Shown piece after piece: positions 1 to 61,695 of a stretch of DNA of 64,000 nt; position 1 is the first letter of the stretch; every line of letters starts with the position of its first letter. The notes beneath the pieces were generated by a model. That model was not told where the DNA came from, did no database searches, and saw nothing but the letters and a program-made list of their open reading frames with translations. Origin of the DNA: Selaginella moellendorffii (lineage: Eukaryota > Plantae > Lycopodiophyta); the NCBI RefSeq assembly GCF_000143415.4, contig NW_003314263.1, positions 1,056,165 to 1,120,164 on the forward strand. The letters run 5' to 3'. The translations under genes were made by a program, and so were the position numbers.

Positions 1-3000
1 AGAATTGATAATGCTCATTGGCAAACTTCTTTGTTTTGTCTTAAGCCATCTGCAAATTCAGTGTATATACCATTAGAATCTTATTAACTTCTATACTTGA
101 TCAGTTATCTCTAAATCAAACTTGTGTTAAACATCCTCACTTAAATGCAATTGTAACTTTAATCTTGTTTTAGGATGCATAAGGGTCATTATTGTTTATC
201 CAATCCAGTGGTTCTTAATTTTTAAGAATATTTACTTTAACTTTAAGGACTGAGCTTGATTTCATATGTTGGCTATTGTTATGGATGAATTGCATCAATA
301 GAAGATACAACTAACTTTTGGGATCATTAGTGTGATGTCTGTCATTGTGATAACTATAGCCAAAATCCATGAACAAAATAAAAGAGACAGATGGAGAGGG
401 AAATTTTTCTAACACTGAGAACTTTTATGACATAAATGTGGCTCTACAAACCAAATTTTAATTATAATTCTAAATTTATAATATTAATATTTTATGACAT
501 AAATATGGCTCTACAAAACAAATATTAAATTATAATAATAAATATATAATAAAATATACAATATACCAATATACAATACAAACAAATTTCGGTTAGCAAA
601 CCAAAGAAAACAGCACAATACAGAAAAATAATTTATTATGTTAAACTCTGATATGCAAGGACTACATTTATTTGCATAAAGACATGCCTTTATTTTAAAA
701 TTCATATTTAAATTAATATTCTCAAATTAGTTTCTTGCAATAAAGATTTAATAAATTTATAAGCTTTCAACATCAAACATTTCCTAACTCAAAATAAATG
801 AATAATGTTAATCAACTTTAAAATAAAGTAACTACTTTGTTATTAACCAAAATTAATATTAATATATAGCATCAATTTATTTATTTAAGTAAATCAGACA
901 AAAATTATGAAAACATAAGTATAAACTATAATTATAAATATTTAGAGTTTAATCTTTAGTTTAGCACTAAAACATTCACACAATTTTTCCTCATGAAATA
1001 TATATATATTGTTATAGTTCTTTACTCATATATTTATGTAGCTTATTCTCAGAAGGAGTTTCATTATGATAATTATGGAAATAATGGAGCAATGCCAAAG
1101 CAAATAAATATGGATATGATAATTACTTCTTTTTTTCATTTCATAACTGAATCATTACCTTTAGGTGGAACTACACCAGAGCATTCTACATTTCATACAT
1201 TCATTATTGGAGAGATTGTAGAAGGTACAACATTAACAATAGATATATTATTTGTTATTCTATCTGCTAGTATAAATTGTCCATTAAACAATAATGGTAT
1301 TCGTCAGATTAACAATGATAATACTAGAGATGTACTGTTAAGAGTTGCTAGACAAACTTATGCTTCTATCCGAAATGCAAGAGCATCATATTTTATGAGT
1401 ATTATTGTTCAACATGATATTGGTATTTTTTTAATATTATATCAAATCCGTGGATATACTATTAGAATAAATCCTCGCTATAATATTAATGCACTTTCAA
1501 TTCCATATAAATTTTGTAATTTCTTACAAAATAGATTATTTAGTGGATATAAAGGTTTGTTTATTGCCACACTTAATGCTGGTGAATTTCTAGTACATCT
1601 TTATAAAGCATATGTGTTTTTAGTACAACAAGATTGTAACAGTGTTTTATATTACAAAAATATAGTTTTATGGAATACTAAAACATATGGAGAAAGTTTT
1701 GATTGTAAATTCAGATTGCAAGAAGATGGAAATTTTGTTTTATATTCAGCATTTGATTTGAAACCATTATATGCAACTGGAACTTATTGTAAGAAATTTA
1801 ATTGTGTAAGCCCATCAATGCTTATTCTACAATTAGATTGTAATGTAATTTTATATGAAGATGATAAACCTTCTATTCAAATGTGGTCAAGTAAAACAAT
1901 ATGTTATAAATAATAAGTTTAAATGTAATCATAAAGTTAAAATTATTGAGACTTATTTTCCAATATATAGTGTTTTATTTTCTATTATTACTCAAAGATA
2001 ATCCCATAACTATTCAGCTTTAGTAATAATATAAAAAATTCTATTTTATATCTGGATTTGAACTAAATAAGAGCCTATTTTTTGTTTACTTTATAAAAAT
2101 ACAATAAGGCCCATAGGAGAATCACAGAAAATACTAACAGAAGACATTGGCAATAGCACATTTTAGTAAGAGATTATATGAAAGATTTTTATGATGAGAA
2201 GATCTCCAAGTTATTAGAACCATGAGGAATGGAAGTGTGAAAAAGTCATTCTAAGAACAAAGATATATTACCCTCTACCTAGAATGAAGTATAGGAAAAG
2301 ATCCCCCCGGTCCAACCCGATCATTGACCGGAGCCCTAGGTGGCCTGCACAAACGATGAAACGACATAGGGTTTGATCAGTTTGATAATAGTTTGTGCTC
2401 AAACAAGTCAAACAAAGGTGAGCTAATGCTTGGTTTGACAAAACAGTGACTACAGAAACAGCAGTCAATAGTAGCTGCAAAATCAAGTTCATGCCAACAT
2501 CGTTTTCAATACACACTCGGGCTTGCTTTTTTTCTTGCTCTTTAGCCTCTTTTTATTTTCTTTTCCATGTTCCCATGTGGTTTCCCACACTCTCTGCCCC
2601 ACTTCTTTCTCTTTTTTTTCAACACTTTTTCTTTGCTCTTTTCTTTGTTATCCTCCTGGAAATATCCCTAAGCATATGTCCATTGATTGTTTGGGAAAAG
2701 AATAATCTCAACTTCTAGATAACATCTCATGGTTGCATGGTTACTCTTTGCTATGGAAGGTGCTGGCTGCAAAGAAACCCATGGGTTCTTATACATCATG
2801 ACAAAGAAAAGTCTCAATTATATCTTGTGACTAGTTTGTCCAATTGCAATGATTGTTGATATTACTGGTGGTTGATGATGGCTTTGATGAAGTGATGTAA
2901 AGAGATATCATGGCAAATGATGGAGTATGGAGGAAAATGGAAAAATGGAAAAAAAAAATACATTGTGCTAGATCAATTGATTTTTGATGATTTTTGTTCT

Positions 3001-3378
3001 ACCAGTGAAAGTAATTTATATAATTCTGTACTTTCTTTGGCATTTCCTGACATTCCTCAAGAAGAATTTTATAATTGGTGTTATTCCCAACTAATAATTG
3101 ATTATTTGGTGATGAAGTTTTTGTTAGCCAAACGTTTCTTGACTGCCATAGGACACCGAAACACTTGGAGTATCAAGGTTATTGTGTTCCTTTTCTACTT
3201 TGGAGCTCTTGGATGCAACTCCCCTGGCCGTGGACGAATTTGACCTCGGGGAGTATTAGCTATGCCAGTAATAGCTGAGGTGAGAGTGATGTTGGTGGGC
3301 GGAATGCCGTAGACAAGCATTGATAGCGGGATTACATCCCACCGGAAGATCAATCTCAGATAAGGCAGACACTAGCGA
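1..3378 (+). repeat. Direct segmental duplication, copy A (pairs with 5520-8877)
   Basis: Colinear high identity from agaattgataatg (1) / aaattgataatg (5521) to gcagacactagcga (3378 / 8877), with two indels of ~150-170 bp. Confidence 0.95.
993..1913 (+). CDS. Secreted protein: unknown N-terminal domain + C-terminal GNA/bulb-type (B-lectin) mannose-binding domain, copy 1 (intact, intronless, 306 aa)
   Basis: Signal-peptide-like N-terminus (MKYIYIVIVLYSYIYVAYSQ); three QxDxNxVxY-type motifs QQDCNSVLY, QEDGNFVLY, QLDCNVILY; long open frame despite ~25% GC; three paralogs in the window. Confidence 0.85.
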   Translation: MKYIYIVIVLYSYIYVAYSQKEFHYDNYGNNGAMPKQINMDMIITSFFHFITESLPLGGTTPEHSTFHTFIIGEIVEGTTLTIDILFVILSASINCPLNNNGIRQINNDNTRDVLLRVARQTYASIRNARASYFMSIIVQHDIGIFLILYQIRGYTIRINPRYNINALSIPYKFCNFLQNRLFSGYKGLFIATLNAGEFLVHLYKAYVFLVQQDCNSVLYYKNIVLWNTKTYGESFDCKFRLQEDGNFVLYSAFDLKPLYATGTYCKKFNCVSPSMLILQLDCNVILYEDDKPSIQMWSSKTICYK

Positions 3379-4235
3379 GCATGCTGTTATTCTCTTGTGT
3401 GAGATTCCCTTTCAATCTTGGAAATGTAGATAAAGTTGATTCTTTGATGTGATATTACTTTCAAATCTTTTGAAAGATTTCAATTTCTTTTATTATTACT
3501 CACAAACAACTCTTGAAAACTTTTATTGAGGATTCACTACAAAAATATACCTTGATCTTTTTATATGGGAGGATTGTGATATAGGTAGACAATAGAGTTT
3601 TTGATATAAATTAATATGTAAATTATAAATGTTATGGAAGGTTCTATGGAGTAGATTTCTTGGTGTTTTCCACCGTATTGTTCATTTCTTCATTTCTCTT
3701 GCTCTAGATTGTTATTTCAGAAGTACTAAAAACATTTTTATCAATATGATAATGATCTTTACATTCATAGATGGGTAATAAAGCCAAGATTTTAATATAA
3801 AGATTGTGATAGTGAAACAAAATTAACATTCCTACATTCCTTTGCACTATAACTCTTACTCACAAATATTTTATTTTCCTTGCTTTCCATCTTCTTAAGA
3901 ACCCTAAAAAAATCTTTTGAATGAAAGAATAGTATATATAGCTGTAAAAGTATTCAAAATATTAAGTAGTCAAATCAAAATATGACAGCTGTAACATTAG
4001 TTATAGTAAAATAATATATCTTTACAAAAGGTAGGTTCTCGTGAAGTTTGCCTTTTTTAAACAACTCAATCTTATAGAAACTTTTATTTCAAATATTTAC
4101 ATATTTTAATATTTTAAAGTTCGCTAGAACCTTCATTTGTTCAATTAATATTTCCTATGTAAGACTTCTAGTTGACTATGTTGACTTAAGTTGACTTGTG
4201 CTGAATTGAGCTCAACTCAACTTTAAACCATCCTC

Positions 4236-4462
4236 TCAAGACTAAGTCCAAGATCAAACTCAAAACCAAATTCAAGATCAAGTCTAAGACCAAGTCCAAG
4301 ACTAAGTCCTATATGGAGTTTAAGACCAAGTTTGAAATGGAGTCTGAGATCAAATCCAAAATGGAGTCCAAGATTGGATCCGAGATGGAAGTTGACATTA
4401 AGACTAAGACTGAGACCAAGACCAAGAACAAGTCTGAATTTGAGTCTGAATCCAAATCCAAG
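4236..4462 (+). repeat. Degenerate 6/12-bp tandem repeat (aagacc/aagtcc/gagtct-type units)
   Basis: caagactaagtccaagatcaaactcaaaaccaaattcaagatcaagtctaagaccaagtccaagactaagtcc... Confidence 0.7.
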
Positions 4463-4479
4463 GGTGAAAGCATAAAGTG

Positions 4480-5519: not shown

Positions 5520-8500
5520 AAAATTGATAATGTTCATTAGCAAACTTCTTTGCTTTGTCTTCAGCCAACAAATTCAGTGTATTTACCATTAGAATCTTAT
5601 TAAGTTCTATACTTGATCACTTATCTCTAAATCAAACTTGTGTTGAACATCCTTGCTTAAATACAATCAGGGTCATTATTGTTTATCCAATCCAGTGGTT
5701 CTTAATTTTTAAGAATATTTACTTTAACTTTAAGGACTGAGCTTGATTTCATATGTTGGCTATTGTTATGGATGAATTGCATCAATAGAAGATACAACTA
5801 ACTTTTGAGATCCTTAGTGTGATGTCTGTCATTGTGATAACTATAGCCTAAATCCATGAACAAAATAAAAGAGACAGATGGAGAGGGAAATTTTCCTAAC
5901 ACTGAGAACTTTTATGACATAAATGTGGCTCTACAAACCAAATTTTAATTATAATTCTAAATATATAATATTAATATTTTATGACATAAATGTGGCTCTA
6001 TAAACCAAATATTAATTTATAATACTAAATATATAATAAATATATCAATATACAATACAAACAAATTTCGGTTAGCAAACCAAAGAAAACAGCACAATAC
6101 AGAAAAATAATTTATTATGTTAAACTCTGATATGTAAGGACTACATTTATTTGCATAAAGACATGCCATTCTTTTATAATTCATATTAAAATTAATATTC
6201 TCATATTAGATTCTTAGAATAAATATTTAATAAATTTATAAGCTTTCAAACATTTCCTAACTCAAAATAGATGAATAATATTAATCAAATTATAAATAAA
6301 GTATCTACTTTGTTATTAACCAAAATTAATATTAATATATAGCATCAATTTAATTATTTAAGTAAATCAAACAAAAATTATAAAAAAGTAAGTATAAAAT
6401 ATAAATAGAAATATTTAGAGTTTAATCTTTAGTTTAGCACTAAAACATTCACACAATTTTTCCTCATGAAATATATATATATTGTTATAGTTCTTTACTC
6501 GTATTTTTATGTAGCTTATACTCAGAAGGAGTTTCATTATGACAATTATGGAAATAATGGAGCAATGCCAAAGCAAATAAATATGGATATGATAATTACT
6601 TCCTTTATTATATTCATAACTAATTCATTACCTTCAGGTGGAACTACACCAGAGCATTCTACATTTCATACATTCATTATTGGAGAGATTGAAGAAGGTA
6701 TAACATTAACAATAGATATATTATTTGTTATTCTATCTGCTAGTATAAATTGTCCATTAGACAATAATGGTATTCGTCAGATTAATAATGATAATACTAG
6801 AGATGTACTGTTAAGAGTTGCTAGACAAACTTATGCTTCTATCCGAAATGCAAGAGCATCATATTTTATGAGTATTATTGTTCAACATGATATTGGTATT
6901 TTTTAATATTATATCAAATCCGTGGATATACTCTTACAATAACTCCTCATTATAATATTAATGCATTTTCAATTCCATATAAATTTTGTAATTTCTTAAA
7001 AAATAGATTATTTAGTGGATATAAAGGTTTGTTTATTGCCACACTTAATGCTGGTGAATTTCTAGTACATCTTTATAAAGCATATGTGTTTTTAGTACAA
7101 CAAGATTGTAACAGTGTTTTATATTACCAAAATATAGTTTTATGGAATACTAAAACATATGGAGAAGGTTTTGATTGTAAATTCAGATTGCAAGAAGATG
7201 GAAATTTTGTTTTATATTCAGCATTTGATTTGAAACCATTATATGCAACTGGAACTTATTGTAAGAAATTTAATTGTGTAAGCCCATCAATGCTTATTCT
7301 ACAATTAGATTGTAATTTAGTTTTATATGAAGACGATAAACCTTCTATTCAAATGTGGTCAAGTAAAACAATATGTTATAAATAATAAGTTTAAATGTAA
7401 TCATAAAGTTAAAAATATTGAGACTTATTTTCCAATATATAGTGTTTTCTTTTCTATTATTACTCAAAGATAATCTCATAACTATTCAGCTTTAGTAATA
7501 ATATAAAAAATTGTATTTTAGATCTGGATTTGAACTAAAGAAGAGCCTATTTTTTGTTTACTTTATAAAAATACAATAAGGCCCATGGGCCAACAAGGAG
7601 AATCAGAGCAAATACTAAAAGAAGACATTAGCAAGAGCACATTTTATTAAGAGATTATATGAAAGATTTTTATGATGAGAAATATCTCCAAGTTATTAGA
7701 ACCATGAGGAATGGAAGTGTGAAATAGGCATTCTAAGAACAAAGATATATTACCCTCTACCTAGAATGAAACAGTGACTACAGAAACAGCAGTCAATAGT
7801 AGCTGCAAAATCAAGTTCATGCCCAACATCATTTTCAATACACACTCCACTATCATGGCTATTCACAATTACTCTCTTAGATGCTATCTTGTCACCATTT
7901 CCTCTCACATCCACAATACCATTCCTCCATATCCACTGCCACTCATTGAAACTTATGGAGCCAAATCAAGATATCATTGGGTACTCTCCATGGACTATTT
8001 GGCCATTATCTAGGTATGGGCTTGCTTTTTTTCTTGCCCTTTAGCCTCTCTTTATTTTCTTTTCCATGTTCCCATGTGGTTTCCCACACTCTCTGCCCCA
8101 CTTCTTTCTCTTGTTTTACAACACTTTTCTTTGCTCTTTTCTTTGTTATCCTCCTGGAAATATCCCTGGGCATATGTCCATTGATTGTTTGGGAAAAGAC
8201 TAATCTCAACTTCTAGATAACATCTCATGGTTGCATGGCTACTCTTTGCTATGGGAGGTGCTGGCTGCAAAGAAACCCATGGGTTCTTATACATCATGAC
8301 AAAGAAAAGTCTTAATTATATCTTGTGACTAGTTTGTCCAATTGCAATGATTGTTGATATTACTGGTGGTTGATGATGGCTTTGATGAAGTGATGTAAAG
8401 AGATATCATGGCAAATGATGGAGTATGGAGGAAAATGGAAAAATGGAAAAAAAAAATACATTGTGCTAGATCAATTGATTTTTGATGATTTTGTGAAAGT

Positions 8501-8877
8501 AATTTATATAATTCTGTACTTTCTTTGGCATTTGTCGACATTCCTCAAGAAGCATTTTATAATTGGTGTTATTCCCAACTAATAATTGATTATTTGGTGA
8601 TGAAGTTTTTGTTAGCCAAACGTTTCTTGACTGCCATAGGACACCGAAACACTTGGAGTATCAAGGTTATTGTGTTCCTTTTCTACTCTGGAGCTCTTGG
8701 ATGCAACTCCCCTGGCCGTGGACGAATTTGACCTCGGGGAGTATTAGCTATGCCAGTAATAGCTGAGGTGAGAGTGATGTTGGTGGGCGGAATGCCGTAG
8801 ACAAGCATCGATAGCGGGATTACATCCCACCGGAAGAGCGTCTTCTAATCAATCTCGGACAAAGCAGACACTAGCGA
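5520..8877 (+). repeat. Direct segmental duplication, copy B (pairs with 1-3378)
   Basis: Colinear with copy A; ends just upstream of the MSI4 promoter. Confidence 0.95.
6466..7385 (+). pseudogene. B-lectin fusion protein copy 2, single 1-bp frameshift (T7 to T6 at ~6899-6904)
   Basis: ORFs 6466-6906 and 7029-7385 match copy 1; ggta-T6-aat versus ggta-T7-aat in copy 1; no other disabling lesion seen; all three QxDxNxVxY motifs are perfect. Confidence 0.8.
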
Positions 8878-8911
8878 TCGTTGTCTATAGAACCCTTTAA
8901 AAAGGAGGGTT

Positions 8912-8920
8912 TTAGGGTTT
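8912..8920 (-). promoter_or_regulatory. Telo-box (AAACCCTAA) immediately upstream of the MSI4 ATG
   Basis: ttagggttt at 8912-8920; known plant promoter/5'UTR element. Confidence 0.5.
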
Positions 8921-8925
8921 TGGGG

Positions 8926-10976
8926 ATGGAAGACGCGATCGAGGAGCGCTACACGCGATGGAAGTCCTCCGTGCCCCTTCTCTACGACTGGTTTACTAAT
9001 CACAATCTCACCTGGCCCTCTCTCAGCTGCCGGTAAGCATATGGATCACACAGTCCGGCATTCTCTCTATTAAACTTTCACGCTGCCCATGGTTTTGGTT
9101 TTAGCTGGGGGCCTTCGGTGGAGCAGGGATCATCTAGAAATCTTCAGCAGCTCTACTTCAGCGAGCAGGCAAGTGATTCCTTTCCTACTCTTCCTCTTGC
9201 TCCTTTGATCAAATTTTTTTCTTCTTGCTCTCTCTCGGCAGACTTATGGGCAGTACCCAAACACGCTTGTAGTTGTCAACTGTGAGATCATAAAACCACG
9301 ATATGCTGCTCACGAGAGCTTATCCCAGGTATGGTTCATCAAGGTTTTTCCTTCCTCTTTTATACGAGAGTGCTTATAGTTTAATGAGGAAGCTCGATCG
9401 CCATACATCAAGCGGCTTAAAACCGTGATCCATCCTGGCGAGGTCAGGAACCAAGAACAAGAAAAACTTAATCGGTTTTGAGCTTGTTTACCACAGGTGA
9501 ACCGAATACGAGACTTACCTCAACTTAGCAGCAAAGTTGTGGCCACGCACACTGATAAGCCCGAGGTTTATCAATTCAATCCTTCGTAGAGTCTCACGAC
9601 TTTCATTCAGGTGTACGTGTGGAATCTCGAATCACAGCCAAATCGATCTCCAGCACCAGGAGCTTCTCCTTCAAAGCCTGATATGGTATTGCGGTTTTTT
9701 TTCCTATGCTTTAGACAATAAGTTCGTTCTTTGGCTGTATGTCCAGGTATTGACAGGCCATACCGCAAACGCGGAGTACGCTCTTGCATTGTGTTCGTGT
9801 GGACCGTTTGTTCTATCTGGAGGTTAATCTCGTTTTAACTTTCGACTGGTATTTTCATTCTGCTAAATGCGTTTTTTATTTTCTTGTCGTAGGACAAGAT
9901 CGGAAGGTTCTGCTTTGGGACATCAACGACGCCGTATCTGGACTTAATACACCAGGAAGGCCTACTATGAACAGCGGTGGAACAGGCACGATAAGCAGCA
10001 CTCACGTTTCAGCAACTGGTATCTTCAAAGGTCATTCTAAAACTGTGGAAGACGTTCAGTTTCGACCATCAAGGTATGGGGTGATCGTCTTTGGATCTTG
10101 TTTCATGATAAAACATTTCTATGCAGTGCAAATGAGTTTTGCAGCGTCGGAGATGACCGCTGTATCATTTTTTGGGACAAGAGACAGGGTAACAGTCCAG
10201 CACAAAAGGTACTTACAACTCTTCCTTTTTCTTCTTTCCGGCTAAACTATGCTCTTGCAGATTACTGATGCACACGACGATGATATTCATTGCTTAGATT
10301 GGAACGCTCATCAGGAGCATTACATTTTGACAGGGTAAAAGTTCCTCGTGCATCACTCTGCTTTAACCTGAAACTCTTTCCGTAGGTCCGCCGATACGTC
10401 TGTCAAGCTCTTCGATCTAAGAAAACTGGATTCGAATGAAAGTGGCTGTCAAGTGAAAAAGTTCAAAACACACGAAAGTGCAGTCTTGGGTGTGCAAGTA
10501 AGAGTACTTGTCTCAAGTATCTGAAAGATGCAAATGAAATTCTTTTTCTTGCAGTGGTGCCCTGCAAAAGCGTCAGCTTTCGCTAGTGCTGCAGCGGACT
10601 CCACGGTGAGCATCAGTGATATCGAGATAAGTTTCAAGAGCTCAGATTCCAACGCAAACCATTCGGAAGGACTGATCTTCAAGCACATTGGACACAGGTG
10701 ATCTAGAAAAGCATGCTTTTCCTTTCTTGAGGTGGAGGTTCATTCAGGGGCCAAATCGTCGACTTCCACTGGGATCCTTTGGAGCCATGGTTACTGGCGA
10801 CCGTGTCCACAGACGCGAAAGGTGGCGGCACACTACAGGTACAAGAAAGTCCATGTTGTTTCACAGTCTAAGATTTCTTTTACCTGTAGCTTTGGCGACT
10901 TAGCGACTTAATCTACCGACCAGAAGACGAAGTTCTTGCAGAGCTAGAGAGCTTAACGAATAAGTCCACAATCTGA
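8926..10976 (+). CDS. MSI4: WD40 histone-binding protein MSI4/FVE-like (multi-exon)
   Basis: Spliced exons read MEDAIEERYTRWKSSVPLLYDWFTNHNLTWPSLSCRWG...LYFSEQ...FNEEARSPYIKRLKTVIHPGEVNRIRDLPQ...ATHTDKPE...LWRLSDLIYRPEDEVLAELE, diagnostic of MSI4/FVE. Confidence 0.93.
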
Positions 10977-11071
10977 TCTAACAGCGCTGGATATACTCTG
11001 GTATATTTATTCATCTCACATGTCGCTGGTTTCAATCAAGCTTGCTGCAGGCTTTTGGTAAAGTCGAGTAA

Positions 11072-12418
11072 ATGCAAAACAAGTTTGGTACTGCGCGAAT
11101 GCTGCAGCTCACACCAAACTGGCGGATAGGTTCTCGCAGAAGGGCACAAAGCCCACAAGATGTTGGCCGTGGTGGCTTTGAAGCCGCAATGTCTGTTGAC
11201 GACGACGACGACGACAACTCTCCAGAAAACGCAAGGACGAAGAAGAAGCAGCACCAACAACAGCAAGAACAAATGGTGAGTTCCTCAGGAAAGCTCTCAA
11301 GAAAGACAGCACGGATCCGGGTATGGTGGCTGCTCTCGATTTGGTTCTCAGCTTTAGCTCGGATAGCAGCGGCAAGAGGGTGCTCGAATGAGCTCAAGTT
11401 GAGCCTCGGCATGGCTCCAAACGCCATGCCCGAGGAAGTGGTCCACAAGGTTGACAGGATGATCCAAGTTCACGCTTTTAGAGCACTCTTGAGACCACAC
11501 ACTGGCACTGTCTACGACGTTCCACTTCCAATGGGGATCCAACCGGGCCTCTCCGTCCAGGCCGTGAGACTCAAGACTGGAAGCTTGCAACACCGGGGAT
11601 TCATCTTCAACGAGTTCATCCTCCCTCCAAGGCTTGCGGTGACGACGAGAGTGAATTCCAGGGAAGAGGTTCCGGAGTACGTGGTTCTCGTCTACAGGTT
11701 TTTCAGCATGAGATTCTCGGCCTACTGTCCGAAGAACGGGATCTCGATCATCGGTCCCGTGGTGGGAATCCGAGCTTACAGTGGGATGGATATGGAGGAG
11801 AGCTCTTCCGGAGTGAAAGCGCCTGTAGAGGCCGAAGTGGTGGCTTTGGAAGACCCCGTGACAGTTCGCATTCCAATCTTTCCACTCTCCGACTCCAACA
11901 AGGTGAATCCGGCGATGTGCGCTCTCTTCGATGGAAACGGGAACACCACCGTCACTCCCATGACTTACGTGAACGTTTGCTCCATGTATCAACTTGGTGA
12001 CGCCACGCTCGTGAACTTCTCCGCGAACAGCACCGGCGAGAGCTGGACGGATTCGATCGAAGCTCCAGTCCCCGCGCCGGGAAAGCACGCGAGGGATCAT
12101 CCCAGCGACGCTGCTCCATCGCCCTCGTCATCGTCTTCGTCCATGGGAGAAAGCAAAGCTCGCCGGAGGCGTTCCTCGTCGAGAATTAAAGCTGGGATCT
12201 TGGGAACAATGGGGGCACTGACAGTGATGATCTTGGGAGCTTTCGTTGGAATGGCCGGTCTGAGAATCCACCACGCTGCGAGGATTTTTAAAATGGAGAT
12301 CCAAGCAAGCGAGAGTGAGTCGCTAGGAACGACGTTGATATCGTACAACGCACGGCCTCCCAATGCCCGTGCTAGCCGTACGAAGCCGTGTCTAGAGAAG
12401 GACTATATCTTCCGATAG
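11072..12418 (+). CDS. DUF1191 family plant membrane protein (true start may be a downstream Met)
   Basis: DRMIQVHAFRALLRPHTGTVYDVPLP...AVRLKTGSLQHRG motif, C-terminal TM helix and ME...ESESL...RP.A..SRT.P.LE tail. Confidence 0.82.
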   Translation: MQNKFGTARMLQLTPNWRIGSRRRAQSPQDVGRGGFEAAMSVDDDDDDNSPENARTKKKQHQQQQEQMVSSSGKLSRKTARIRVWWLLSIWFSALARIAAARGCSNELKLSLGMAPNAMPEEVVHKVDRMIQVHAFRALLRPHTGTVYDVPLPMGIQPGLSVQAVRLKTGSLQHRGFIFNEFILPPRLAVTTRVNSREEVPEYVVLVYRFFSMRFSAYCPKNGISIIGPVVGIRAYSGMDMEESSSGVKAPVEAEVVALEDPVTVRIPIFPLSDSNKVNPAMCALFDGNGNTTVTPMTYVNVCSMYQLGDATLVNFSANSTGESWTDSIEAPVPAPGKHARDHPSDAAPSPSSSSSSMGESKARRRRSSSRIKAGILGTMGALTVMILGAFVGMAGLRIHHAARIFKMEIQASESESLGTTLISYNARPPNARASRTKPCLEKDYIFR

Positions 12419-31905: not shown

Positions 31906-32823
31906 ATGAAGTATTTAAATTTAATAATTATATTTTATTCATATTTTTCTGTAACTTATGCTCAAAAGGGATTTCATTTTGATGATTATGGAGATAATGG
32001 AAAAATTCCAGAAATAGATATGAATAATATATTTTTTGCTTTTATAATTTTTTTAAGTAGAGCATTGCCTCCAGGTGGAACTACACCACAAGGTTCTATA
32101 TTTCATGCACCTTATTTTACGAGGATTTCTGATAATGAAATATTAACAATAGATATGTTATTTGTTATAGTGTCTACTAGTATAAATTGCCCATTAAACA
32201 ATAATGGTATTCGTCAAATTAATAATGATGATGTTGGACATTTATTATTGGAAGTTACTAGACAAGTTTATTCTTCTGTCACTCATGCAAGAGCATCATA
32301 TTTTATAAGTATTATTGTCCAACATGATATTGGTATTTTTGCAATATTATATCAAATACGTGGATATCAATCAAGATTAACTTCTCATGGTAATAATTAT
32401 TTGTTTACTCCTCAATATAAATTTTGTAACTTCTTAAAAAATAGGTTATTTAGTGGATATAAAGGTTTTTATATAGCCACACTTTATGCTGGTAAGTTTT
32501 TAACACATATTTATAAAGCATATATACTTTTAGTACAAAATGATTGTAATACTGTTTTTTATTATAAAGATATAGTTTTATGGGATACTAAAACTTATGG
32601 AATGAGTTTTGATTGTACATTAAGATTACAAGAATATGGAAATCTTGTTCTTTATTCAGCATTTGATTTAAAACCTTTATTCACAACTGAAACTTATTGT
32701 AAAATAACTAATTGTGTGAAGCCATCAATATTTATTTTACAATTAAACTGTAATCTAATTTTATATGAAGATGGAAAACCTTTGATACAAATGTGGTCAA
32801 GTAGTACAATATGTTATAATTAA
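31906..32823 (+). CDS. B-lectin fusion protein copy 3 (intact, 305 aa)
   Basis: Colinear with copy 1 (SINCPLNNNGIRQINND, ARASYF, NRLFSGYKG); lectin motifs QNDCNTVFY, QEYGNLVLY, QLNCNLILY. Confidence 0.85.
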   Translation: MKYLNLIIIFYSYFSVTYAQKGFHFDDYGDNGKIPEIDMNNIFFAFIIFLSRALPPGGTTPQGSIFHAPYFTRISDNEILTIDMLFVIVSTSINCPLNNNGIRQINNDDVGHLLLEVTRQVYSSVTHARASYFISIIVQHDIGIFAILYQIRGYQSRLTSHGNNYLFTPQYKFCNFLKNRLFSGYKGFYIATLYAGKFLTHIYKAYILLVQNDCNTVFYYKDIVLWDTKTYGMSFDCTLRLQEYGNLVLYSAFDLKPLFTTETYCKITNCVKPSIFILQLNCNLILYEDGKPLIQMWSSSTICYN

Positions 32824-49553: not shown

Positions 49554-51725
49554 TCACCAAAACTCTCGGCAGGAGCAGCATCCATCCTCAAACAGATGGA
49601 ACCGAACCGCGTCTCTGCAGATGATAGCTCGCCGCTCGAGCTTGGAGATGATCGACGTGATTCGGTGGCAGTCTTCGCAAACGCGGAGGTTTTTTATGAT
49701 CCTGATCGCCGTCCCCGCTTGTGTGTTGATGAGAGCGCAGCAAATCGCTAGTCTCTCGCTGTGTCCGCACAGTGCCGACTCCTTCTCGTTGTCTGGAAGA
49801 GCTCGGACGACACAGTCGAGGTTGGGAGTGCAGCCCGCTTCTTCCTTGATTCTGGACTGGAGTTCTCCGAGCTTTGCGAGGATCTGCTCGCTTTGGTGGT
49901 GAGTAGTGTCCCCGACGACGAACCTGTGGACTTTTCCGGCACTGTCAATCCACCAGCTTTGTCCAAGCTTCTTCCAACACCGAGCTTCTTTCCTCATTGC
50001 CTCCACCCGAGCGAAATCCTCCCACAAACCAGCAGCAGCGTACGTGTTTGCCATGAGCAAATAGGCCGCATCGTCTTTATCGTCCAGCCTCAGTATCGAC
50101 TCAAACGCAAGGCGGCCAACACTTACATTCTTCCACTTCCTTGCAGCGCTTAGAACCGTCCTCCATGCCACCAAAGTTGGCTTGTAAGGCATGCTCTCGA
50201 GTGCTGATAGTGCTTGTTCCAGCTGATTCCCACGGCCGAGAAGATCTATCACGCAGATATAGTGCTCAAGGCTGGGAGAGATTGAATGAACCGTGTTCAT
50301 CGCTTCGAAGCATCTCTTTCCTTGATCCACAAGCCCGGCATGGCTGCAGACCGTGAGCACCGAGAGATAAGTGACTCCGTTTGGTTTCACGCGCTCCTTT
50401 TGCATTCTCTCGAATAGCTCAAACACTTGCTTAGAATCTCCTTGATGGCTATATCCAGCGATCAAAGCGGTCCATGAAACCATGTCCTTCTGCCCAATGG
50501 AATCAAACACCTGCTTAGCATCGTCCATGCTTCCACATTTTGCATAAAAGCTGACGAGAGAATTCGCCAAGAGCACATCTGTCTCCAGTAAGCTACCAGA
50601 AACTTGGGCATGAATCCTTCTCCCGGCTTCTAATGCAGCAATACTTCCACAAGCTCGCAATGCCGCCATGAAAAGCCGAGTGTCCGCTACAAAGCCTTCG
50701 TCTTCCATGCGCTTGAAGAGCTCAAGGGCGAGCTCTCCTTCATCGCTCTGAGAGTATCCATTGATGAGAGTGTCCCATGACACAAGGCTGTGGCTTGGCA
50801 TTCTCTCAAACACCCTGCGTGCTTCCACCATGCTCCCACACTTGCAATACATATCCAGCAGTGTATTCGCTACAAAAATTTCGGCCTCGTATCCTCTCAA
50901 AGAAAGCTTGGCGTGGAGAACTCTTCCTTTCTCTAAACTTGCAGTTTTTACCACCTTTCCCTTCACCATTTCTCCAACTTCTTTCTCTCCAATATCAATG
51001 CAAGCCTTAAGCGTCGCAATGAAAACCTGTGAGTCAGGATCGCAACCTTCCTCCTCCATGCGTGAGAACATCGCTAGAGCTGTCTCTCCCTGTCCATTAT
51101 ACGCATAACCAAGAATCAAAGCTCCCCAAGTCACCACATTTCGACAAACCATTCCCTCGAAAACAATTCTCGCATCTTCCACGCTCCCCAGCTTTGAGTA
51201 CATATCCACCAAGGAATTCGCAACATAGAGGTTGGATTCGTGACCATCTTTTCTCAGCTGATCATGAATCGATTTCCCCTTTTCTAGCCAGATCCCATTG
51301 CTCGTAGATTTGTCTTCTCGATCGTGGCAGTCATCCTTCACTGCCAAGCTCGAGCACGCGTTCAAAGCAGCGACAAAGAGCATGGAGTCCGGTTGACAAC
51401 TTCCCTCTTCCTGGATCCTCAGGAATAACTCCACAGCTAAACTCCCCTCTCCATTCTGGGAATAGCCCCCGATCAAAACGCTCCAAGAGACAAGGCTGTG
51501 ATGCGGCATTGTGTCGAAGATCCGGCGAGCATCCACCAGGCTGCCGCATCTAGCATACATCGCAATGAGAGTGTTGGCGACGAAGATGTGCCTGTCCTTC
51601 CCACACTGGATCAAGTCGCGATGTATCTTCATACCTGAATGGAGATCCTTGGAGCCGCGGCAGTTCTTGAGAGCAGCAAGAAACTCCGGGATGCTGGCCG
51701 CCGCGGCATTCTTGAGCGCCTTCAT
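49554..51725 (-). CDS. PLS-E-DYW-type PPR protein ending in EFW
   Basis: PLS repeats, LGQSWWI box, HSERLA...CEDCH, terminal CSCREFW. Confidence 0.95.
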   Translation of the reverse strand: MKALKNAAAASIPEFLAALKNCRGSKDLHSGMKIHRDLIQCGKDRHIFVANTLIAMYARCGSLVDARRIFDTMPHHSLVSWSVLIGGYSQNGEGSLAVELFLRIQEEGSCQPDSMLFVAALNACSSLAVKDDCHDREDKSTSNGIWLEKGKSIHDQLRKDGHESNLYVANSLVDMYSKLGSVEDARIVFEGMVCRNVVTWGALILGYAYNGQGETALAMFSRMEEEGCDPDSQVFIATLKACIDIGEKEVGEMVKGKVVKTASLEKGRVLHAKLSLRGYEAEIFVANTLLDMYCKCGSMVEARRVFERMPSHSLVSWDTLINGYSQSDEGELALELFKRMEDEGFVADTRLFMAALRACGSIAALEAGRRIHAQVSGSLLETDVLLANSLVSFYAKCGSMDDAKQVFDSIGQKDMVSWTALIAGYSHQGDSKQVFELFERMQKERVKPNGVTYLSVLTVCSHAGLVDQGKRCFEAMNTVHSISPSLEHYICVIDLLGRGNQLEQALSALESMPYKPTLVAWRTVLSAARKWKNVSVGRLAFESILRLDDKDDAAYLLMANTYAAAGLWEDFARVEAMRKEARCWKKLGQSWWIDSAGKVHRFVVGDTTHHQSEQILAKLGELQSRIKEEAGCTPNLDCVVRALPDNEKESALCGHSERLAICCALINTQAGTAIRIIKNLRVCEDCHRITSIISKLERRAIICRDAVRFHLFEDGCCSCREFW

Positions 51726-51874: not shown

Positions 51875-53159
51875 ATGCTGGCGATTTCAAGGCGCCACGC
51901 AGGTAGTGTCTCGAGCGATTCCCTCGCAAGAATGCGGACAAGGTCCTCTTACTGGTGCTTTTGTTCTAGTGCCCAAAATCCAGAGTGCTTGGTTTGCTCA
52001 AGCTCCAGAGTTTGAGAGATGGGATAGAGGCGGGGGAAATGTGCACAGGCTTGCGCGGGTTGATCCATCGGTGGTGGTGGAAATCGGTGGAGTTGTACAC
52101 GCTGGTGCCACGATCGGTGAGTCTTCTCACGTTGGATCGGGATGTATTGTTGGACCGGATGTTTGCATTGGTTCTTCGGTGGTATTGAGGTATCGGAGTT
52201 CTTCCTTTATTCTCACCCTCTCTTTTGGCAACTTCGATGTCACAGGTATAACGTGGTGCTGCAAAACTGTTCGATTGGAGATTTTTGCACCCTCCATAGC
52301 GGTGTTTGCGTGGGACAAGATGGTATGTTTCTTTCCGAAAGCTTTCTCTTATGTGATTCGTGATTTCTTGCAAGGTTTTGGATTCACTTACGACTCAAAC
52401 AATAGCATTGTCAAGAAGCCCCAGGAAAGTTTCTATGCGTTCTTTCTTCTCTTATCTCATGATCCTTTTGTCTTTTTTTTCTTAGGAGTTGCGGGTAAAG
52501 ATTGGAAACAGTGTGGAAATCGGTGCCAATTCGTCCATCGACCGTGGGAGGTAACTAAAGATGTTACATGTTCTTCTTAAGTCTCGTTTGCTCTGGATGG
52601 ATCGTCAGCTGGCGTGACACAGTCATCGGGGATAACACGAAGCTTGACAACTTGGTCCAGGTTTGAGAAACGTTTTCTTTTCTTGAGCATCGCTTACTCT
52701 TGGCTTGTTTACATGTAGATTGGACACAATGTTGTGATAGGATGCAACTGTATGATTTGTGGACAAGTTGGAATTGCCGGATCTTGCACGTAAGTACGAA
52801 CAACCTTGTTGTTCTTGAGATCTTTCTCTTTTTTCTTCGCTGCAGACTAGGAGATAATGTAGTCTTGGGTGGCCAAGCAGGTGTTGCGGACCACATAGAA
52901 ATCGCTTCAAAGGTCCTGGTTCCTGACGTTGCCAATCTCTTCATCACTTTCTTTTCTCTAGGTCCGAATCGCAGCGAAAAGTGGAGTTACCTCAAACATT
53001 ACCGAGCCAGGAGACTATGCCGGTTTTCCAGCAGTATGGTTTCTTTTCCCAGTTTAGTTGCAAAAACACTTGTGCTTACTGAAGTCACAGGTGCCCGTGA
53101 AACAATGGCGGGAATCGGTGGTGGCTTCTCGAAGACTTTGTGACAAACATCCAAAGTGA
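51875..53159 (+). CDS. LpxD: UDP-3-O-acylglucosamine N-acyltransferase (plant lipid A pathway, multi-exon)
   Basis: Hexapeptide repeats; VGQDGFGF...VKKPQ|[47 protein letters not shown]...GQVGIAGS...GDYAGFPAVPVKQWR. Confidence 0.93.
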
Positions 53160-54650: not shown

Positions 54651-54695
54651 AAATTGTGCTAAATCCTTTGCTCTAGCGGGTACCTTTAGCGCCAG

Positions 54696-56355: not shown

Positions 56356-56459
56356 CCCCCAATGAAAAGTAGCGATGAGGAGGAACTTTTCTACGCATTA
56401 CAATTAGTTTGCTTCTTGTCTCACGTTCCTGTGCAAGTTTCTTACTTCACTCAAAAAGC

Positions 56460-58461: not shown

Positions 58462-59582
58462 CTTCTTTAAAAGCCAAACGTGACTCTCTTCCCTTGGCTC
58501 AGCAAATCCATCCGGCTGCTGCATATAAATCTCCTCTTCCAGTTCTCCATAGAGGAAAGCAGTAGTGACATCCAGGTGCTCGATATCATAGTCACCAGCC
58601 GCAGCAAAATGGATCAAAGCACGAAGAGGACCGCGGGCTTAAAAGTCTCGTGGAAATCGATTCGGAAGAAATGCATAATCCAGCAGCCCCCTCTCTTGAA
58701 TTCTAGGAACTTGAGTGCAGCCCTTCGCAACCAGTCTGGCCTTGAAACGAGTGGTGCCATCAGGATTTCCCTTCAAAGCAAACACCCACATTCTCTTCAC
58801 AAGTTTCCTCCCAGCAGGAATGGAAGAAACCAGCACGTGAGTGCCATTCTTCCTCTGCGAGTGCATCTCGTCCCCCATCGCTGCAAGCCAGAATTTGGCT
58901 TCTGGAGAATCCAAGGCTTGTGTATAAGTTTTGGGCAACCACTGGAATTTCACCAGCAGTAGAAGCAACCATCGTCTCAATGAGGCGAGACAGTTTCTTG
59001 CGCTGGCGGTCAGAGCGGCGGAGTGCATTAGGGTCAACCCTGGATCCCTATGTGCGTTGGTCCATCATAGGAATGGGAGCAGTCACAGAGCCTACTAGAA
59101 GCTCCTCAGGAGGATCTCCCACTTGTTGAAGAGTCTCCCACATCGTTTGGACCAGGTAAGCTGTGAGACGAGCTGAGCAGGGGCTCCTCGTTGAAGTTCA
59201 CATCCCTGCCGATGATCTCTGTGCGTGTAGCAGGATTCCAGAGACACCAGGCAGCATGATCCAAGCCGTAGCCCAAGAATTTACACTCAATGCTTTTTGC
59301 ATCAAGCTTTCCTCACAGCTTCACAGCCAAAAATACGCAAGTGTGCCACTGAGGGATTTCTGCCAGTCCAGGCCTCCTCAGGAGTTCTTTCATCCACAGT
59401 GGTTGTAAGTAATCAATTTTGGACGTAGTTAGCAAGGTTAATAGCGTCAACCCAAAAGGAATTGGGAAGGCCACTAACCTGTAGCATTGCACGTGCACTT
59501 TCCATCAAGGTGCCATTTTTCCTCTCAGCACAACCGTTTTGCTGAGGAGAATATGCAGCTGTGAATTCACGAAGAATGCCAC
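58462..59582 (-). mobile_element. Ty1/Copia pol fragment (integrase core to RT N-terminus), degenerate
   Basis: TAAYSPQQNGCAERKNGTLMESARAML (integrase); PKTYTQAL...RFKARLVAKG; HLDVTTAFLYGELEEEIYMQQPDGF (RT). Confidence 0.93.
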
Positions 59583-60801
59583 TAGAAAAAAAAAAACAAT
59601 TACAGATAATAAATTTATATAAAAAACCTGAAACAAATATACAAATATTCATAACAAAAATATATACAGAAAATAGATAATATAAAACCAATAATAATTA
59701 CAGGAGATTTCAATATTAACTATCAAAAAGAAGAAGCAAAACCACTTCAAATAATACTGGAGAAAGAAGGATACATACAAATAATAAAAGACAATATGGA
59801 TAAAAGATATAATATATACAAAAGCAGGAATAGCACCTGTATATTGGACAAATTATATATCATAATAAAAAATATTTAAAAAAAAAAAACCAAACATTGC
59901 TGCAATGTAATGTGTAGCAATTTTATTACCAATTTAGCTTGTTTTTTTATTAATCCTTTTTTATGTAATGATTGTCACGTTATATGTGCCATTATTTTAT
60001 TAGTTTGGTCTAATAGGTTCTAGGCACTAGGGAGAAATTTTTAAGAGGGACACCAAGTTTCTCCCTTCCCCCAATTTCAGTGTTATGTCACCAATGGGGT
60101 GCATAAAACAAGAGAGAGAGAGAGAGAGCCACAGGGAAGCAAAAGTGAAGTAACCACCCCTCCATGCAAGCATAGCTAGCAGTGTTTCAATAACTTTAGT
60201 TTAAAAAATTAATGATTTCTAATTGCACATTTGGATTTGTTTGAACTTTGGTGTCATAAGTAGTGTAATGTGTTATATTGTTCCCACTTTAGTTTAAATG
60301 GCTTAGTGAAGGAGGATGTTTTAACTTTGCTTTATACTTGCCTGGGTTTTGAACAATGGGATTGTGCAGAAAGCACTACTTTGTCTACTTTCTGAACAAG
60401 AAGTGATGTTAAAAAGGACTAATCACCTTACTATTGTTACCTGTGCCCATGGGCATATGCAAACATGTACAGAGAGGCATTAATTTAGGTCTATGTTGTG
60501 GAAGTTGAGCAGGAGGTGGGGAATAGAAGAGAAATATGAGTGGAATTTAAAACAAGTAGCAATACAACAAAAAAAGATTGTCTTTAACCTAAAAAACTAA
60601 AGGTAAAAGAAGTTTATTTACAAATAATTATGCTTTCAATTGGTTTAATCTTATATTATTAGATTGCTCAATCATAAAAATTGATTTATTCTCTTCCATT
60701 ACTAGTAAAAACTTTTACTAGATTACACTAATATATTCCTCAAAAACACTATTTATAAGTATTTATAAAATACCAATTTTTTTAAATATTAGAGATTTAG
60801 T

Positions 60802-61695
60802 ATGAATTATTATATATTTCTATTTTCCCTATTCTTGAGCATTAATACAGTTTTAACTTCTTATACATATAATGGCCAAAATGCCATGGAAAGTGATAGT
60901 ATTGAATTAATTTTATATGCAATGGAATTAATGATTAATAACATCTCTTCAGAACCTTTACCTAAAGGTCAAGGTATGCAATTTGAATATACTATACAAG
61001 ATAATACTCATGGTCTATTAACTATTACAAATCAATTATGGGTTTATGATACCAAGGGAAAAAAATTTGATACATGTGCTTTAAATCCAAATGAATATGA
61101 ACAAGATCATGGTGATAATGTTAAATATCGGTTAAATTTTATATTAAATTTATATCGTTATGATATAAGAAGATTACGTGCAAGTTATTTTCGGGCTGTT
61201 ATTGGTTTTTATTGTGTTGAATATCTTTTAAAGAATTTTCGACAAAATTTACTATATCAATTTCAAAATATCAATAAAATAGATAAATTAACTGATTGTG
61301 AAATAAAAATAACGACACTAATTAGTAATATACCAGATAATGCTCTTAGACCTACTCAATTTTTAACATCACCAAATAAAAAAGCTTTATTGTATTTGCA
61401 TTTGAACTGTATTTTATCATTATATATACAAAATGTTTTAAAATGGTATAGAGGGTTTCAAAGTTATCAAAATTGTTTATTTATTATTGAAGATGATGGA
61501 AATATAGTGTTATATTCTGAAAAGAAATATATAGTTTGGTCTCCAAAAATTAATTTTGATAATTCACATAGTTATTTTATAAAATTTATTTCACTTCAAG
61601 ATGATTGTAATTTAGTTCTTTATGAATCTCATCAAAAAGTTATTTCAAGGCATCCAGTAATTAAACCAAAATGGGATTCACAAACACATTGTTAA
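60802..61695 (+). CDS. B-lectin fusion protein copy 4 (divergent, intact, 297 aa, intronless)
   Basis: Signal peptide; shares LP.G, LTI, C.LN.N and IR..RASYF with copies 1-3; lectin motifs EDDGNIVLY and QDDCNLVLY. Confidence 0.8.
   Translation: MNYYIFLFSLFLSINTVLTSYTYNGQNAMESDSIELILYAMELMINNISSEPLPKGQGMQFEYTIQDNTHGLLTITNQLWVYDTKGKKFDTCALNPNEYEQDHGDNVKYRLNFILNLYRYDIRRLRASYFRAVIGFYCVEYLLKNFRQNLLYQFQNINKIDKLTDCEIKITTLISNIPDNALRPTQFLTSPNKKALLYLHLNCILSLYIQNVLKWYRGFQSYQNCLFIIEDDGNIVLYSEKKYIVWSPKINFDNSHSYFIKFISLQDDCNLVLYESHQKVISRHPVIKPKWDSQTHC

What the first reader, a model, noticed from the sequence alone, without database searches (positions are those of the whole stretch)
993..61695. Four-member family of secreted 'unknown domain + GNA lectin' proteins, confined to AT-rich transposon islands: candidate lectin-targeted defence toxin system
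Seen: four ~300-codon intronless genes (993, 6466, 31906, 60802) share a signal peptide, a ~150-aa N-terminal domain I cannot assign (conserved LP.G, LTI, C.LN.N, RASYF), and a C-terminal domain with QxDxNxVxY motifs. They are ~25% GC (sampled by eye) against ~50-55% for neighbouring PPRs, and every AT-rich island in the window holds one. Established: QxDxNxVxY is the mannose-binding site of GNA/bulb-type lectins. In plants this domain usually stands alone or sits N-terminal in S-domain kinases, and GNA lectins are anti-insect/nematode proteins. Inference: a novel effector domain delivered by a C-terminal glycan-binding module (A-B toxin-like), possibly horizontally acquired and spread with mobile DNA. 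Three open frames survive deep divergence at a GC content where stops arise easily, which argues for selection.
Basis: partly seen in the sequence, partly recalled or inferred. Interest (0 to 1): 0.9.

Follow-up and report, generated by a model that had tools for sequence, protein, structure and literature searches.

The report
Hidden spikemoss double-lectin gene family
The spikemoss Selaginella moellendorffii carries a largely unannotated family of very AT-rich, intronless genes for secreted proteins that join a cysteine-poor Gnk2/DUF26-like domain to a snowdrop-type (GNA) mannose lectin; the genes have been kept intact by selection, but no transcripts were found in the RNA data I could check.

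Summary
The window has four paralogues: three intact (993-1913, 31906-32823, 60802-61695) and one with a single frameshift (6466-7385). All have 24-26% GC and GC3 near 10%, against GC3 of 0.56-0.73 in neighbouring genes. The window is Selaginella moellendorffii. Seven other loci of its assembly hold the same ~300-codon frame, while the annotation lists only 73-113-residue lectin fragments. The scan's first readers flagged this family on many other pieces of the genome.

- **C-terminal domain:** a GNA/bulb lectin (E 1.7e-14 to gastrodianin) with two canonical QxDxNxVxY sites.
- **N-terminal domain:** no sequence relative among 1.84 billion proteins, PDB or Pfam. Its AlphaFold model (pLDDT 74) matches Gnk2/DUF26 domains first (Z 9.2-9.4), then fungal Y3/LDL lectins and KP4 toxins. 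It lacks the DUF26 cysteine motif.
- **Selection:** codon models give omega 0.25-0.44 (p down to 1e-23).
- **Spread:** similarity between paralogues starts at the ATG, and no transposon ends were found.
- **Origin:** no viral or microbial donor was found. CpG depletion matches the adjacent repeat-rich spacer.
- **Expression:** three RNA-seq runs gave zero reads.

Best reading: a lineage-specific, birth-and-death family of secreted two-lectin-fold proteins. An A-B toxin or a horizontal-transfer origin is not supported.

The parts
993..1913 (+). c1: intact gene, 306 aa, subfamily A. Signal-like N-terminus 993-1052, Gnk2/DUF26-like N-domain 1053-1532, GNA lectin domain 1533-1910.
   Evidence: Its lectin part is the annotated 96-aa partial model P0126.
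6466..7385 (+). c2: tandem duplicate of c1 (97% nt identity in the ORF), broken by one single-base frameshift in a T-run near 6903. The two pieces are 6466-6903 and 6903-7382.
   Evidence: Its lectin part is the annotated partial model P0127.
31906..32823 (+). c3: intact gene, 305 aa, subfamily A, 79% nt identity to c1. Similarity ends about 24 nt outside the ORF.
60802..61695 (+). c4: intact gene, 297 aa, subfamily B (27% aa identity to c1; groups with L005-L007).
3..3378 (.). Left unit of a 5.5-kb tandem segmental duplication that carries c1. Its partner is 5522-8877, which carries c2. Identity is 94-95%.
5522..8877 (.). Right unit of the tandem duplication, carrying c2.
400..2110 (.). AT-rich block around c1 (GC 18-30% in 200-nt bins). 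For c3 and most other copies the block is only the ORF plus about 200 nt on each side; for c4 it runs to about 62700.
8900..12418 (+). Neighbouring expressed multi-exon gene (14 introns of 45-73 nt, last exon DUF1191). Not part of the family; it served as the positive control for the RNA reads.
58639..59691 (-). Ty1/copia-type reverse transcriptase and integrase fragments 1.1-2.2 kb upstream of c4. This is the only transposon protein signal found next to a copy in the window.
   Evidence: sub-threshold Pfam hits to RVT_2 and rve_3.

Best explanation
These are members of a lineage-specific, multi-copy gene family of Selaginella moellendorffii. Each member is a compact, intronless unit of about 1.3 kb. 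It encodes a secreted protein of about 300 residues with two carbohydrate-binding-type folds in tandem.

The N-terminal domain is predicted to have the alpha+beta fold of Gnk2/DUF26 'stress-antifungal' domains, a fold shared with the fungal Y3/LDL lectins and KP4. It lacks the DUF26 cysteine motif and any detectable sequence similarity to that family. The C-terminal domain is a GNA-type beta-prism II lectin that retains two canonical mannose-site motifs.

Shown here:
- The family evolves by local and dispersed duplication with frequent loss (birth and death).
- Individual copies have been kept open by purifying selection at their present loci.
- The genes carry an extreme AT and CpG-depleted composition like that of the adjacent repeat-rich spacer. 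I read that as long-term cytosine methylation (inference).
- They are silent in the RNA libraries tested.

Inferred: the proteins act in the apoplast as glycan-binding defence proteins, by analogy with antifungal mannose-binding Gnk2 and the GNA lectins. Expression would be limited to a condition or tissue not yet sampled.
For: Family and anatomy:
- Four copies lie in the window.
- Seven further loci of GCA_000143415.2 carry the same full-length frame around annotated 73-113-aa lectin fragments, plus one more broken copy.
- At least 17 annotated partial lectin models exist.

Lectin domain:
- The profile matches gastrodianin at 1.7e-14 and GNA at 1e-13.
- Pfam B_lectin matches 5 of 10 members, best 1.2e-11.
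- Site motifs are 5/5 at sites 1-2 in most of subfamily A and at sites 2-3 in most of subfamily B.

N-domain:
- The AlphaFold2 model of the L005 N-domain with a 10-sequence alignment has pLDDT 74 and pTM 0.71.
- The Foldseek top hit is Gnk2 (probability 1.0, E 1.1e-3).
- The exhaustive VIA search gives PDLP8 Z 9.4, Gnk2-mannose Z 9.2 (101 residues, 2.9 A), PDLP5 8.3, Y3 7.7, KP4s 6.0-6.2 and LDL 5.6, then a drop to 4.7.
- ESM Atlas gives TM 0.59-0.61 to PF01657 clusters.
- The N-domains of subfamilies A and B are homologous (hhalign 93%, E 3e-7).

Selection:
- Omega is 0.435 for subfamily A and 0.249 for B. By domain it is 0.56/0.28 (N) and 0.28/0.13 (C). All likelihood-ratio tests against omega = 1 have p of 7e-5 or lower.
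- About 59 (A) and 254 (B) nonsense substitutions are expected if neutral; none is seen in the aligned frames.
- Terminal branches make up about 70% of the subfamily A tree, so the constraint acted on copies in place.
- DNA similarity between dispersed paralogues begins at the ATG and ends 10-40 nt after the stop.

Secretion: a hydrophobic N-terminus is present in all members.

Composition: CpG observed/expected is 0.07-0.47, against 0.95 in host genes and 0.13 in the adjacent repeat-rich spacer.
Against: - No transcript was found. There were zero reads at 80% likeness or more on 6401-8800 in three RNA-seq runs, while the next gene had depth 5-20. Nineteen other runs of the species, which the tool only guesses to be RNA, held none of c1's words.
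- Three of 12 copies examined are broken.
- The recent duplicate pair c1/c2 is about as diverged in the ORF as in its flanks; L001/L003 is only slightly more conserved in the ORF.
- Z 9 is only a little above the tool's stated background of 7-8.
- No sequence-level link to DUF26 was found.
- Sugar binding and a defence role are inferred, not tested.
- GC3 of 10% in a gene under selection is not explained by methylation decay alone.
Confidence: 0.6

Rival explanations
1. A-B type toxin. The N-domain is a toxic, KP4-like killer module, and the GNA lectin only targets it to glycans on a fungal, insect or nematode cell.
For: The fold class includes the KP4 killer toxin and the Zt-KP4 effector (Z 6.0-6.2). 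The N-domain evolves faster than the lectin domain (omega 0.56 against 0.28 in A; 0.28 against 0.13 in B), as expected for a module in an arms race. Placing the lectin at the C-terminus resembles toxin-lectin chimeras.
Against: The best matches are the sugar-binding DUF26/Gnk2 and Y3 domains, not KP4. No enzyme or known toxin family was detected by sequence. No positive selection was shown. No activity data exist.
Confidence: 0.15
2. Foreign origin. The 1.3-kb AT-rich units came by horizontal transfer from an AT-rich donor (fungus, protist or large DNA virus) and then multiplied, or were inserted repeatedly.
For: GC3 is 0.09-0.15 against 0.56-0.73 in host genes, and the AT-rich block is confined to the gene unit. 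No relative of the N-domain exists in any other plant protein set searched. The nearest non-plant folds are fungal. Selaginella is known to hold some virus-like genes (PMC4083422).
Against: No donor or relative was found among 1.84 billion proteins, viral contigs or viral structure models. The lectin domain forms one clade beside plant GNA lectins and is not nested in bacteria, though support is weak. CpG depletion with TpG/CpA excess equals that of the adjacent repeat-rich spacer. Duplicates with shared flanks show copying inside the plant. Constraint acted on terminal branches. The published giant-virus survey lists no lectin.
Confidence: 0.1
3. The family is extinct or going extinct. It was once functional, is now silenced and methylated like repeats, and its still-open frames simply have not yet decayed.
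For: No reads were found in three RNA-seq runs. CpG depletion resembles that of the neighbouring repeat-rich spacer. Three of 12 copies are broken. Recent duplicates diverge at about the flank rate.
Against: Nine of 12 frames are intact at a composition where 9% of random codons are stops. Most of the selective signal sits on terminal branches. All indels between intact copies are in frame. A TATA-like motif is kept 20-60 nt upstream in most copies (weak evidence).
Confidence: 0.15

Closest known systems
Gnk2 (ginkbilobin-2) and DUF26 / PF01657 'stress-antifungal' domains of CRRSPs, CRKs and PDLPs
   Same: Both are secreted. The predicted alpha+beta fold (two helices packed on an antiparallel sheet) superposes on about 100 residues with Gnk2 and the PDLP5/8 DUF26 domains (Z 8.3-9.4). 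Selaginella has canonical DUF26 proteins (PMC6368629).
   Different: There is no Pfam match, and no C-X8-C-X2-C motif or three disulfides; only two conserved Cys lie in the N-terminal half. The domain is fused to a GNA lectin, and the DUF26 survey I searched never mentions GNA or bulb lectins.
GNA-type (bulb-type, B_lectin PF01453) mannose-binding lectins, for example GNA and gastrodianin
   Same: The C-domain aligns over the whole about 110-residue beta-prism II. It has three QxDxNxVxY-type subdomains and the conserved Cys pair.
   Different: It carries four extra conserved Cys, and one of the three sites is degenerate in each subfamily. It sits C-terminal to another domain rather than alone or at the N-terminus of S-domain kinases. 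Its codon usage is extreme.
Fungal Y3 (Coprinus comatus) and LDL (Lyophyllum decastes) lectins; KP4 killer toxin and Zt-KP4
   Same: They share the fold class (Z 7.7, 5.6 and 6.0-6.2) and are small secreted proteins.
   Different: The structural scores are lower than for DUF26, there is no sequence similarity, and none is fused to a GNA lectin.
Toxin-lectin chimeras: type 2 ribosome-inactivating proteins, and bacterial LlpA lectin-like bacteriocins (tandem MMBL domains)
   Same: They share the idea of a lectin module joined to a second module in a secreted defence protein. LlpA uses the same B-lectin fold (pyocin L1 and putidacin hits).
   Different: No enzymatic A-chain was detected. The partner domain here has a lectin-type fold. 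The family is not related by descent to either group as far as tested.

Membership tests
GNA / bulb-type lectin (PF01453) | Sequence-profile match over the whole domain to solved family members | tested here: met
   Profile A3 against PDB gives gastrodianin 1.7e-14 and GNA 1e-13. Pfam matches 5 of 10 members, best 1.2e-11. c1-c3 alone are below the Pfam cutoff.
GNA / bulb-type lectin (PF01453) | Threefold internal repeat with QxDxNxVxY mannose-site motifs | tested here: met
   In most members of subfamily A sites 1 and 2 score 5/5, and in most of subfamily B sites 2 and 3 score 5/5; the third site is degenerate. The repeat is also visible in the DNA (D1).
GNA / bulb-type lectin (PF01453) | Actual mannose or oligomannoside binding | not testable with these tools
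   Needs a glycan array or ITC.
DUF26 / Gnk2 (PF01657 Stress-antifung) | Match to the Pfam model | tested here: not met
   No PF01657 hit even at E 10 for any of 10 members.
DUF26 / Gnk2 (PF01657 Stress-antifung) | C-X8-C-X2-C motif and three disulfide bridges | tested here: not met
   Only two conserved Cys lie in the N-terminal half (C96 and C175 of c1), and their spacing does not fit the motif.
DUF26 / Gnk2 (PF01657 Stress-antifung) | Compact alpha+beta fold, two helices on a five-stranded sheet | tested here: met
   The predicted model (pLDDT 74) matches Gnk2 and PDLP DUF26 first in three searches. This is a prediction, not a solved structure.
DUF26 / Gnk2 (PF01657 Stress-antifung) | Mannose-binding residues of Gnk2 conserved | not tested
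   The tools return no residue-level structural alignment.
KP4 killer toxin | Sequence or close structural match to KP4 | tested here: inconclusive
   Z is 6.0-6.2, below the DUF26 matches and below the tool's background of 7-8. No Pfam hit.
A-B toxin (enzymatic A chain + lectin B chain) | A recognisable catalytic or toxic A module | tested here: not met
   No enzyme or toxin family by Pfam, PDB sequence or fold search.
Endogenous giant-virus (NCLDV-like) gene | Closest relatives in viruses, with neighbouring viral genes | tested here: not met
   No relative in viral contigs or viral structure models. No other long AT-rich ORFs lie beside the copies. The published survey lists only an exoribonuclease family and EFJ10148.
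Transposon cargo gene | Copies share flanks bounded by terminal repeats or target duplications | tested here: not met
   Dispersed paralogues share only the ORF. No convincing TIR or LTR surrounds the copies. Repeats near the copies vary in place and orientation.

The most novel reading that the evidence does not exclude
The N-domain is a relic-like, cysteine-free relative of the fold from which land-plant DUF26 arose, or a fungal Y3/KP4-type module captured by a lycophyte. The compact AT-rich units would then be a self-contained killer-toxin-plus-lectin cassette that multiplies in the genome and is held silent by methylation until challenge. That would be a plant A-B-type defence toxin of a kind not described.
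Probability: 0.12. Interest if true: 0.8.

Novelty: new variant of a known kind. Interest (0 to 1): 0.55.

Why it matters
DUF26 is described as a land-plant-specific domain whose only outside resemblance is structural, to fungal lectins (PMC6368629). A large lycophyte family with the same predicted fold, but no DUF26 cysteines and a GNA lectin attached, adds an unexpected branch to that story. It also gives a testable case of two sugar-binding folds working in one secreted protein.

The finding also exposes an annotation gap. Dozens of full-length genes are recorded only as 73-113-residue lectin fragments, so published lectin and DUF26 censuses of Selaginella miss them.

Finally, genes under purifying selection with GC3 near 10% and CpG depletion, sitting among genes with GC3 of 0.6-0.7, are a compositional puzzle. 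It bears on how methylation, silencing and selection interact in plant multigene defence families.

Tried and rejected
- Full-length c1 against 5.8 billion proteins gave no hit.
- The four-sequence N-domain profile against 1.84 billion representatives gave one hit, P0001. This is an animal Tudor-repeat protein matched by 12 weak repeats, so I reject it as spurious.
- The ten-sequence N-domain profile gave no hit in the word-indexed search, PDB sequences or Pfam.
- ESM Atlas feature searches on the c1 and L005 N-domains gave nothing usable.
- The idea that the N-domain is a degenerate second GNA domain is rejected (hhalign probability 0.07%).
- AlphaFold2 of full-length c1 with 5 sequences failed (pLDDT 33). 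Only the second job, the L005 N-domain with 10 sequences, gave a usable model.
- Exact-sequence look-ups found no full-length c1 and no neighbouring PPR-DYW protein. The organism came instead from lectin-fragment hits.
- The giant-virus relic idea found no viral relative and no support in PMC4083422.
- The transposon cargo idea found no shared flanks or terminal repeats.
- Nei-Gojobori-type dN/dS gave misleadingly high values (0.67-1.1) because synonymous sites are nearly two-state at GC3 of 10%. I replaced these with ML codon models.
- The lectin-domain tree has too few columns to resolve the sister group. It only shows the family is monophyletic and not inside the mycobacterial LysM-lectin clade.
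- RIP-type indices were not informative beyond the CpG depletion.
- The small contig set X1 held a 225-nt piece 98% identical to c2 and another contig with only a 31-nt match. Neither says anything about expression.

Full report
**1. The observation**

ORF listing and translation confirm four related frames on the + strand. These are c1 993-1913 (306 aa), c2 6466-7385, c3 31906-32823 (305 aa) and c4 60802-61695 (297 aa). c2 is colinear with c1 but shifts frame once, at a single-base difference in a T-run near 6903.

GC is 0.24-0.26 and GC3 0.10-0.12. The neighbouring PPR, PPR-DYW, PX and DUF1191 genes have GC 0.51-0.57 and GC3 0.56-0.73. At this composition 9% of random codons are stops, so one open frame of about 300 codons has a chance probability near 5e-13.

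c1 and c2 lie in a 5.5-kb tandem duplication (3-3378 and 5522-8877, 94-95% identity). c3 matches c1 at 79% nt identity only from 24 nt before the ATG to 20 nt after the stop. c4 is 27% identical in protein.

**2. Organism and family size**

A profile of the C-terminal domain found seven Selaginella moellendorffii 'hypothetical protein, partial' models of 73-113 aa. I fetched their loci from GCA_000143415.2. In every case the annotated fragment lies inside a frame of about 300 codons with the same signal-like start, N-domain and lectin domain.

One of these (L001) has a single frameshift near its end. One locus (L005) holds a second, broken copy. Cluster look-up shows at least 17 annotated partial models. 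Two of them, shown without accession, are identical to the lectin parts of c1 and c2, so the window is from this species' NCBI assembly.

The family splits into subfamily A (c1, c2, c3, L001-L004) and subfamily B (c4, L005-L007). The scan's notebook shows that first readers flagged the same layout on many other pieces of this genome. I did not verify those.

**3. The C-terminal domain**

The family profile matches solved GNA-type lectins over the full domain: gastrodianin 1.7e-14 and GNA 1e-13. Pfam B_lectin matches 5 of 10 members, best 1.2e-11. c1-c3 individually fall below the curated cutoff.

The QxDxNxVxY motif is complete at sites 1 and 2 in most of subfamily A and at sites 2 and 3 in most of subfamily B. 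The usual Cys pair and four further Cys are conserved.

**4. The N-terminal domain**

There is no sequence relative anywhere:
- the full-length search;
- an exhaustive HMM search of 1.84 billion representatives, whose one hit is a spurious repeat protein;
- a ten-sequence profile search;
- PDB sequences;
- Pfam at E 10;
- the ESM Atlas by features.

It is not a degenerate lectin repeat. The A and B versions are homologous (hhalign 93%, E 3e-7).

AlphaFold2 on c1 with five sequences failed (pLDDT 33). With the ten-sequence alignment and L005 as target it gave pLDDT 74 and pTM 0.71. The model is a two-helix, antiparallel-sheet alpha+beta domain.

Three searches agree on the fold:
- Foldseek against PDB puts ginkbilobin-2 first (probability 1.0, E 1.1e-3), then the PDLP DUF26 ectodomains and the Y3 lectin.
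- The Foldseek-independent search of 48,161 chains gives PDLP8 Z 9.4, Gnk2-mannose Z 9.2 (101 residues, 2.9 A), PDLP5 8.3, Y3 7.7, Zt-KP4 6.2, KP4 6.0 and LDL 5.6, then unrelated folds from 4.7.
- The ESM Atlas gives TM 0.59-0.61 to Stress-antifung (PF01657) clusters.

Viral structure models gave nothing.

The defining DUF26 cysteine motif is absent, so I file this as DUF26-like in fold and not as a member. The DUF26 survey I read (PMC6368629) notes the structural kinship with fungal lectins and lists Selaginella DUF26 proteins. Neither 'GNA' nor 'bulb' occurs in its text. The lectin survey PMC6362431 relies on annotated proteins and InterPro domains.

**5. Selection**

Simple counting methods gave dN/dS near 0.7-1.1. 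They are unreliable when synonymous sites are almost two-state.

ML codon models (MGK+F3X4) give omega 0.435 for subfamily A and 0.249 for B. Both domains are constrained: N 0.56 and 0.28, C 0.28 and 0.13. All likelihood-ratio tests against omega = 1 are significant, with p from 7e-5 to 1e-23.

About 59 (A) and 254 (B) nonsense substitutions would be expected on the trees if evolution were neutral. None is present in the aligned frames, and all indels between intact copies are in frame.

Terminal branches carry about 70% of the A tree, so the constraint acted on copies at their present places. Consistently, DNA similarity between dispersed paralogues starts exactly at the ATG and ends 10-40 nt after the stop.

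The c1/c2 pair differs about as much in the ORF as in its flanks; the L001/L003 ORF is slightly more conserved than its flanks. One copy of each pair is broken. This is a birth-and-death pattern.

**6. Composition and origin**

The AT-rich block is the ORF plus about 200 nt on each side. Beyond that GC returns to 35-55%.

CpG observed/expected is 0.07-0.47 with TpG/CpA excess. It is 0.95 in the PPR genes and 0.13 in the spacer between c1 and c2. This fits long-term cytosine methylation inside the plant genome. It does not fully explain GC3 of 10% in a selected gene.

Tests for a foreign origin were negative or unresolved:
- No terminal repeats or shared flanks define a mobile element.
- The only transposon protein signal near a copy is a copia-type fragment upstream of c4.
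- No viral or microbial relative of the N-domain was found.
- The lectin domains form one clade next to plant GNA lectins, not inside the bacterial LysM-lectin group, though resolution is poor.
- The giant-virus footprint paper for this species lists no lectin.

**7. Expression**

No run on record as RNA holds c1's words, and nineteen other runs of the species, which the tool only guesses to be RNA, hold none.

I laid three 2026 RNA-seq runs (about 1.4 Gb read from each) on 6401-12400 at 80% likeness or more. They gave zero reads over 6401-8800. That stretch includes c2, and at this threshold it would also catch reads from c1. The adjoining spliced gene at 8900-12400 had depth 5-20 with 14 confirmed introns.

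c3 and c4 were not tested directly. A TATA-like motif 20-60 nt upstream recurs in most copies of both subfamilies. In AT-rich DNA this is weak evidence.

**8. Verdict**

This is a real gene family, shaped by purifying selection and essentially unannotated. It encodes secreted proteins that join a predicted Gnk2/DUF26-like fold without the DUF26 cysteines to a GNA lectin.

The most likely role is glycan-binding defence in the apoplast under conditions not yet sampled. This step is inferred from what Gnk2 and GNA lectins do. The A-B toxin idea survives only as a minority reading through the KP4 resemblance. Horizontal transfer and spread by transposons are not supported.

I rate it a new variant of known kinds: a new domain layout and a divergent branch of a known fold, with a striking and unexplained composition.

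Noticed in passing
window:8900-12418 (+): An expressed gene with 14 very short introns (45-73 nt) whose last exon carries DUF1191. One junction (9164/9238) was reported with GC..CG ends. The RNA reads show many heterozygous-looking SNPs.
   Followed up: partly
window:17936-27491 and 49554-51725: A cluster of five intronless PPR genes, two with E and DYW deaminase domains, with a PX-domain ORF between them.
   Followed up: partly
L005:740-1603: A second, broken family copy lies 3.6 kb upstream of the intact L005 gene (46% aa identity to L006). Only its lectin half remains as an open frame.
   Followed up: partly
L001:5509-6339: This copy has a single frameshift just before the third lectin subdomain. 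The rest of the domain continues in another frame.
   Followed up: yes
window:7191-7221 (run X1, record 2): A 632-nt contig from a small public data set matches only 31 nt of c2's lectin region. It is probably another paralogue or a relative's copy.
   Followed up: no
window:42158-42832 (-) and 51906-52580 (+): These ORFs have sub-threshold Pfam hits to AAA ATPase families and a hexapeptide-repeat transferase. Gene structure was not examined.
   Followed up: no
window:40681-41120: Another first-reader note reports an orphan small secreted Cys-rich protein here, beside a tRNA-Pro. My scan for long AT-rich ORFs (70 aa or more, GC below 0.33) did not list it, so it does not share the lectin family's composition.
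   Followed up: no
same genome, other pieces (scan notes s1-361238, s1-394654): First readers report other Selaginella chimeras in which a GNA or cyanovirin lectin is joined to a different N-terminal module (barnase-like, S-protein-homologue-like). This hints that lectin fusions are a wider theme in this genome.
   Followed up: no
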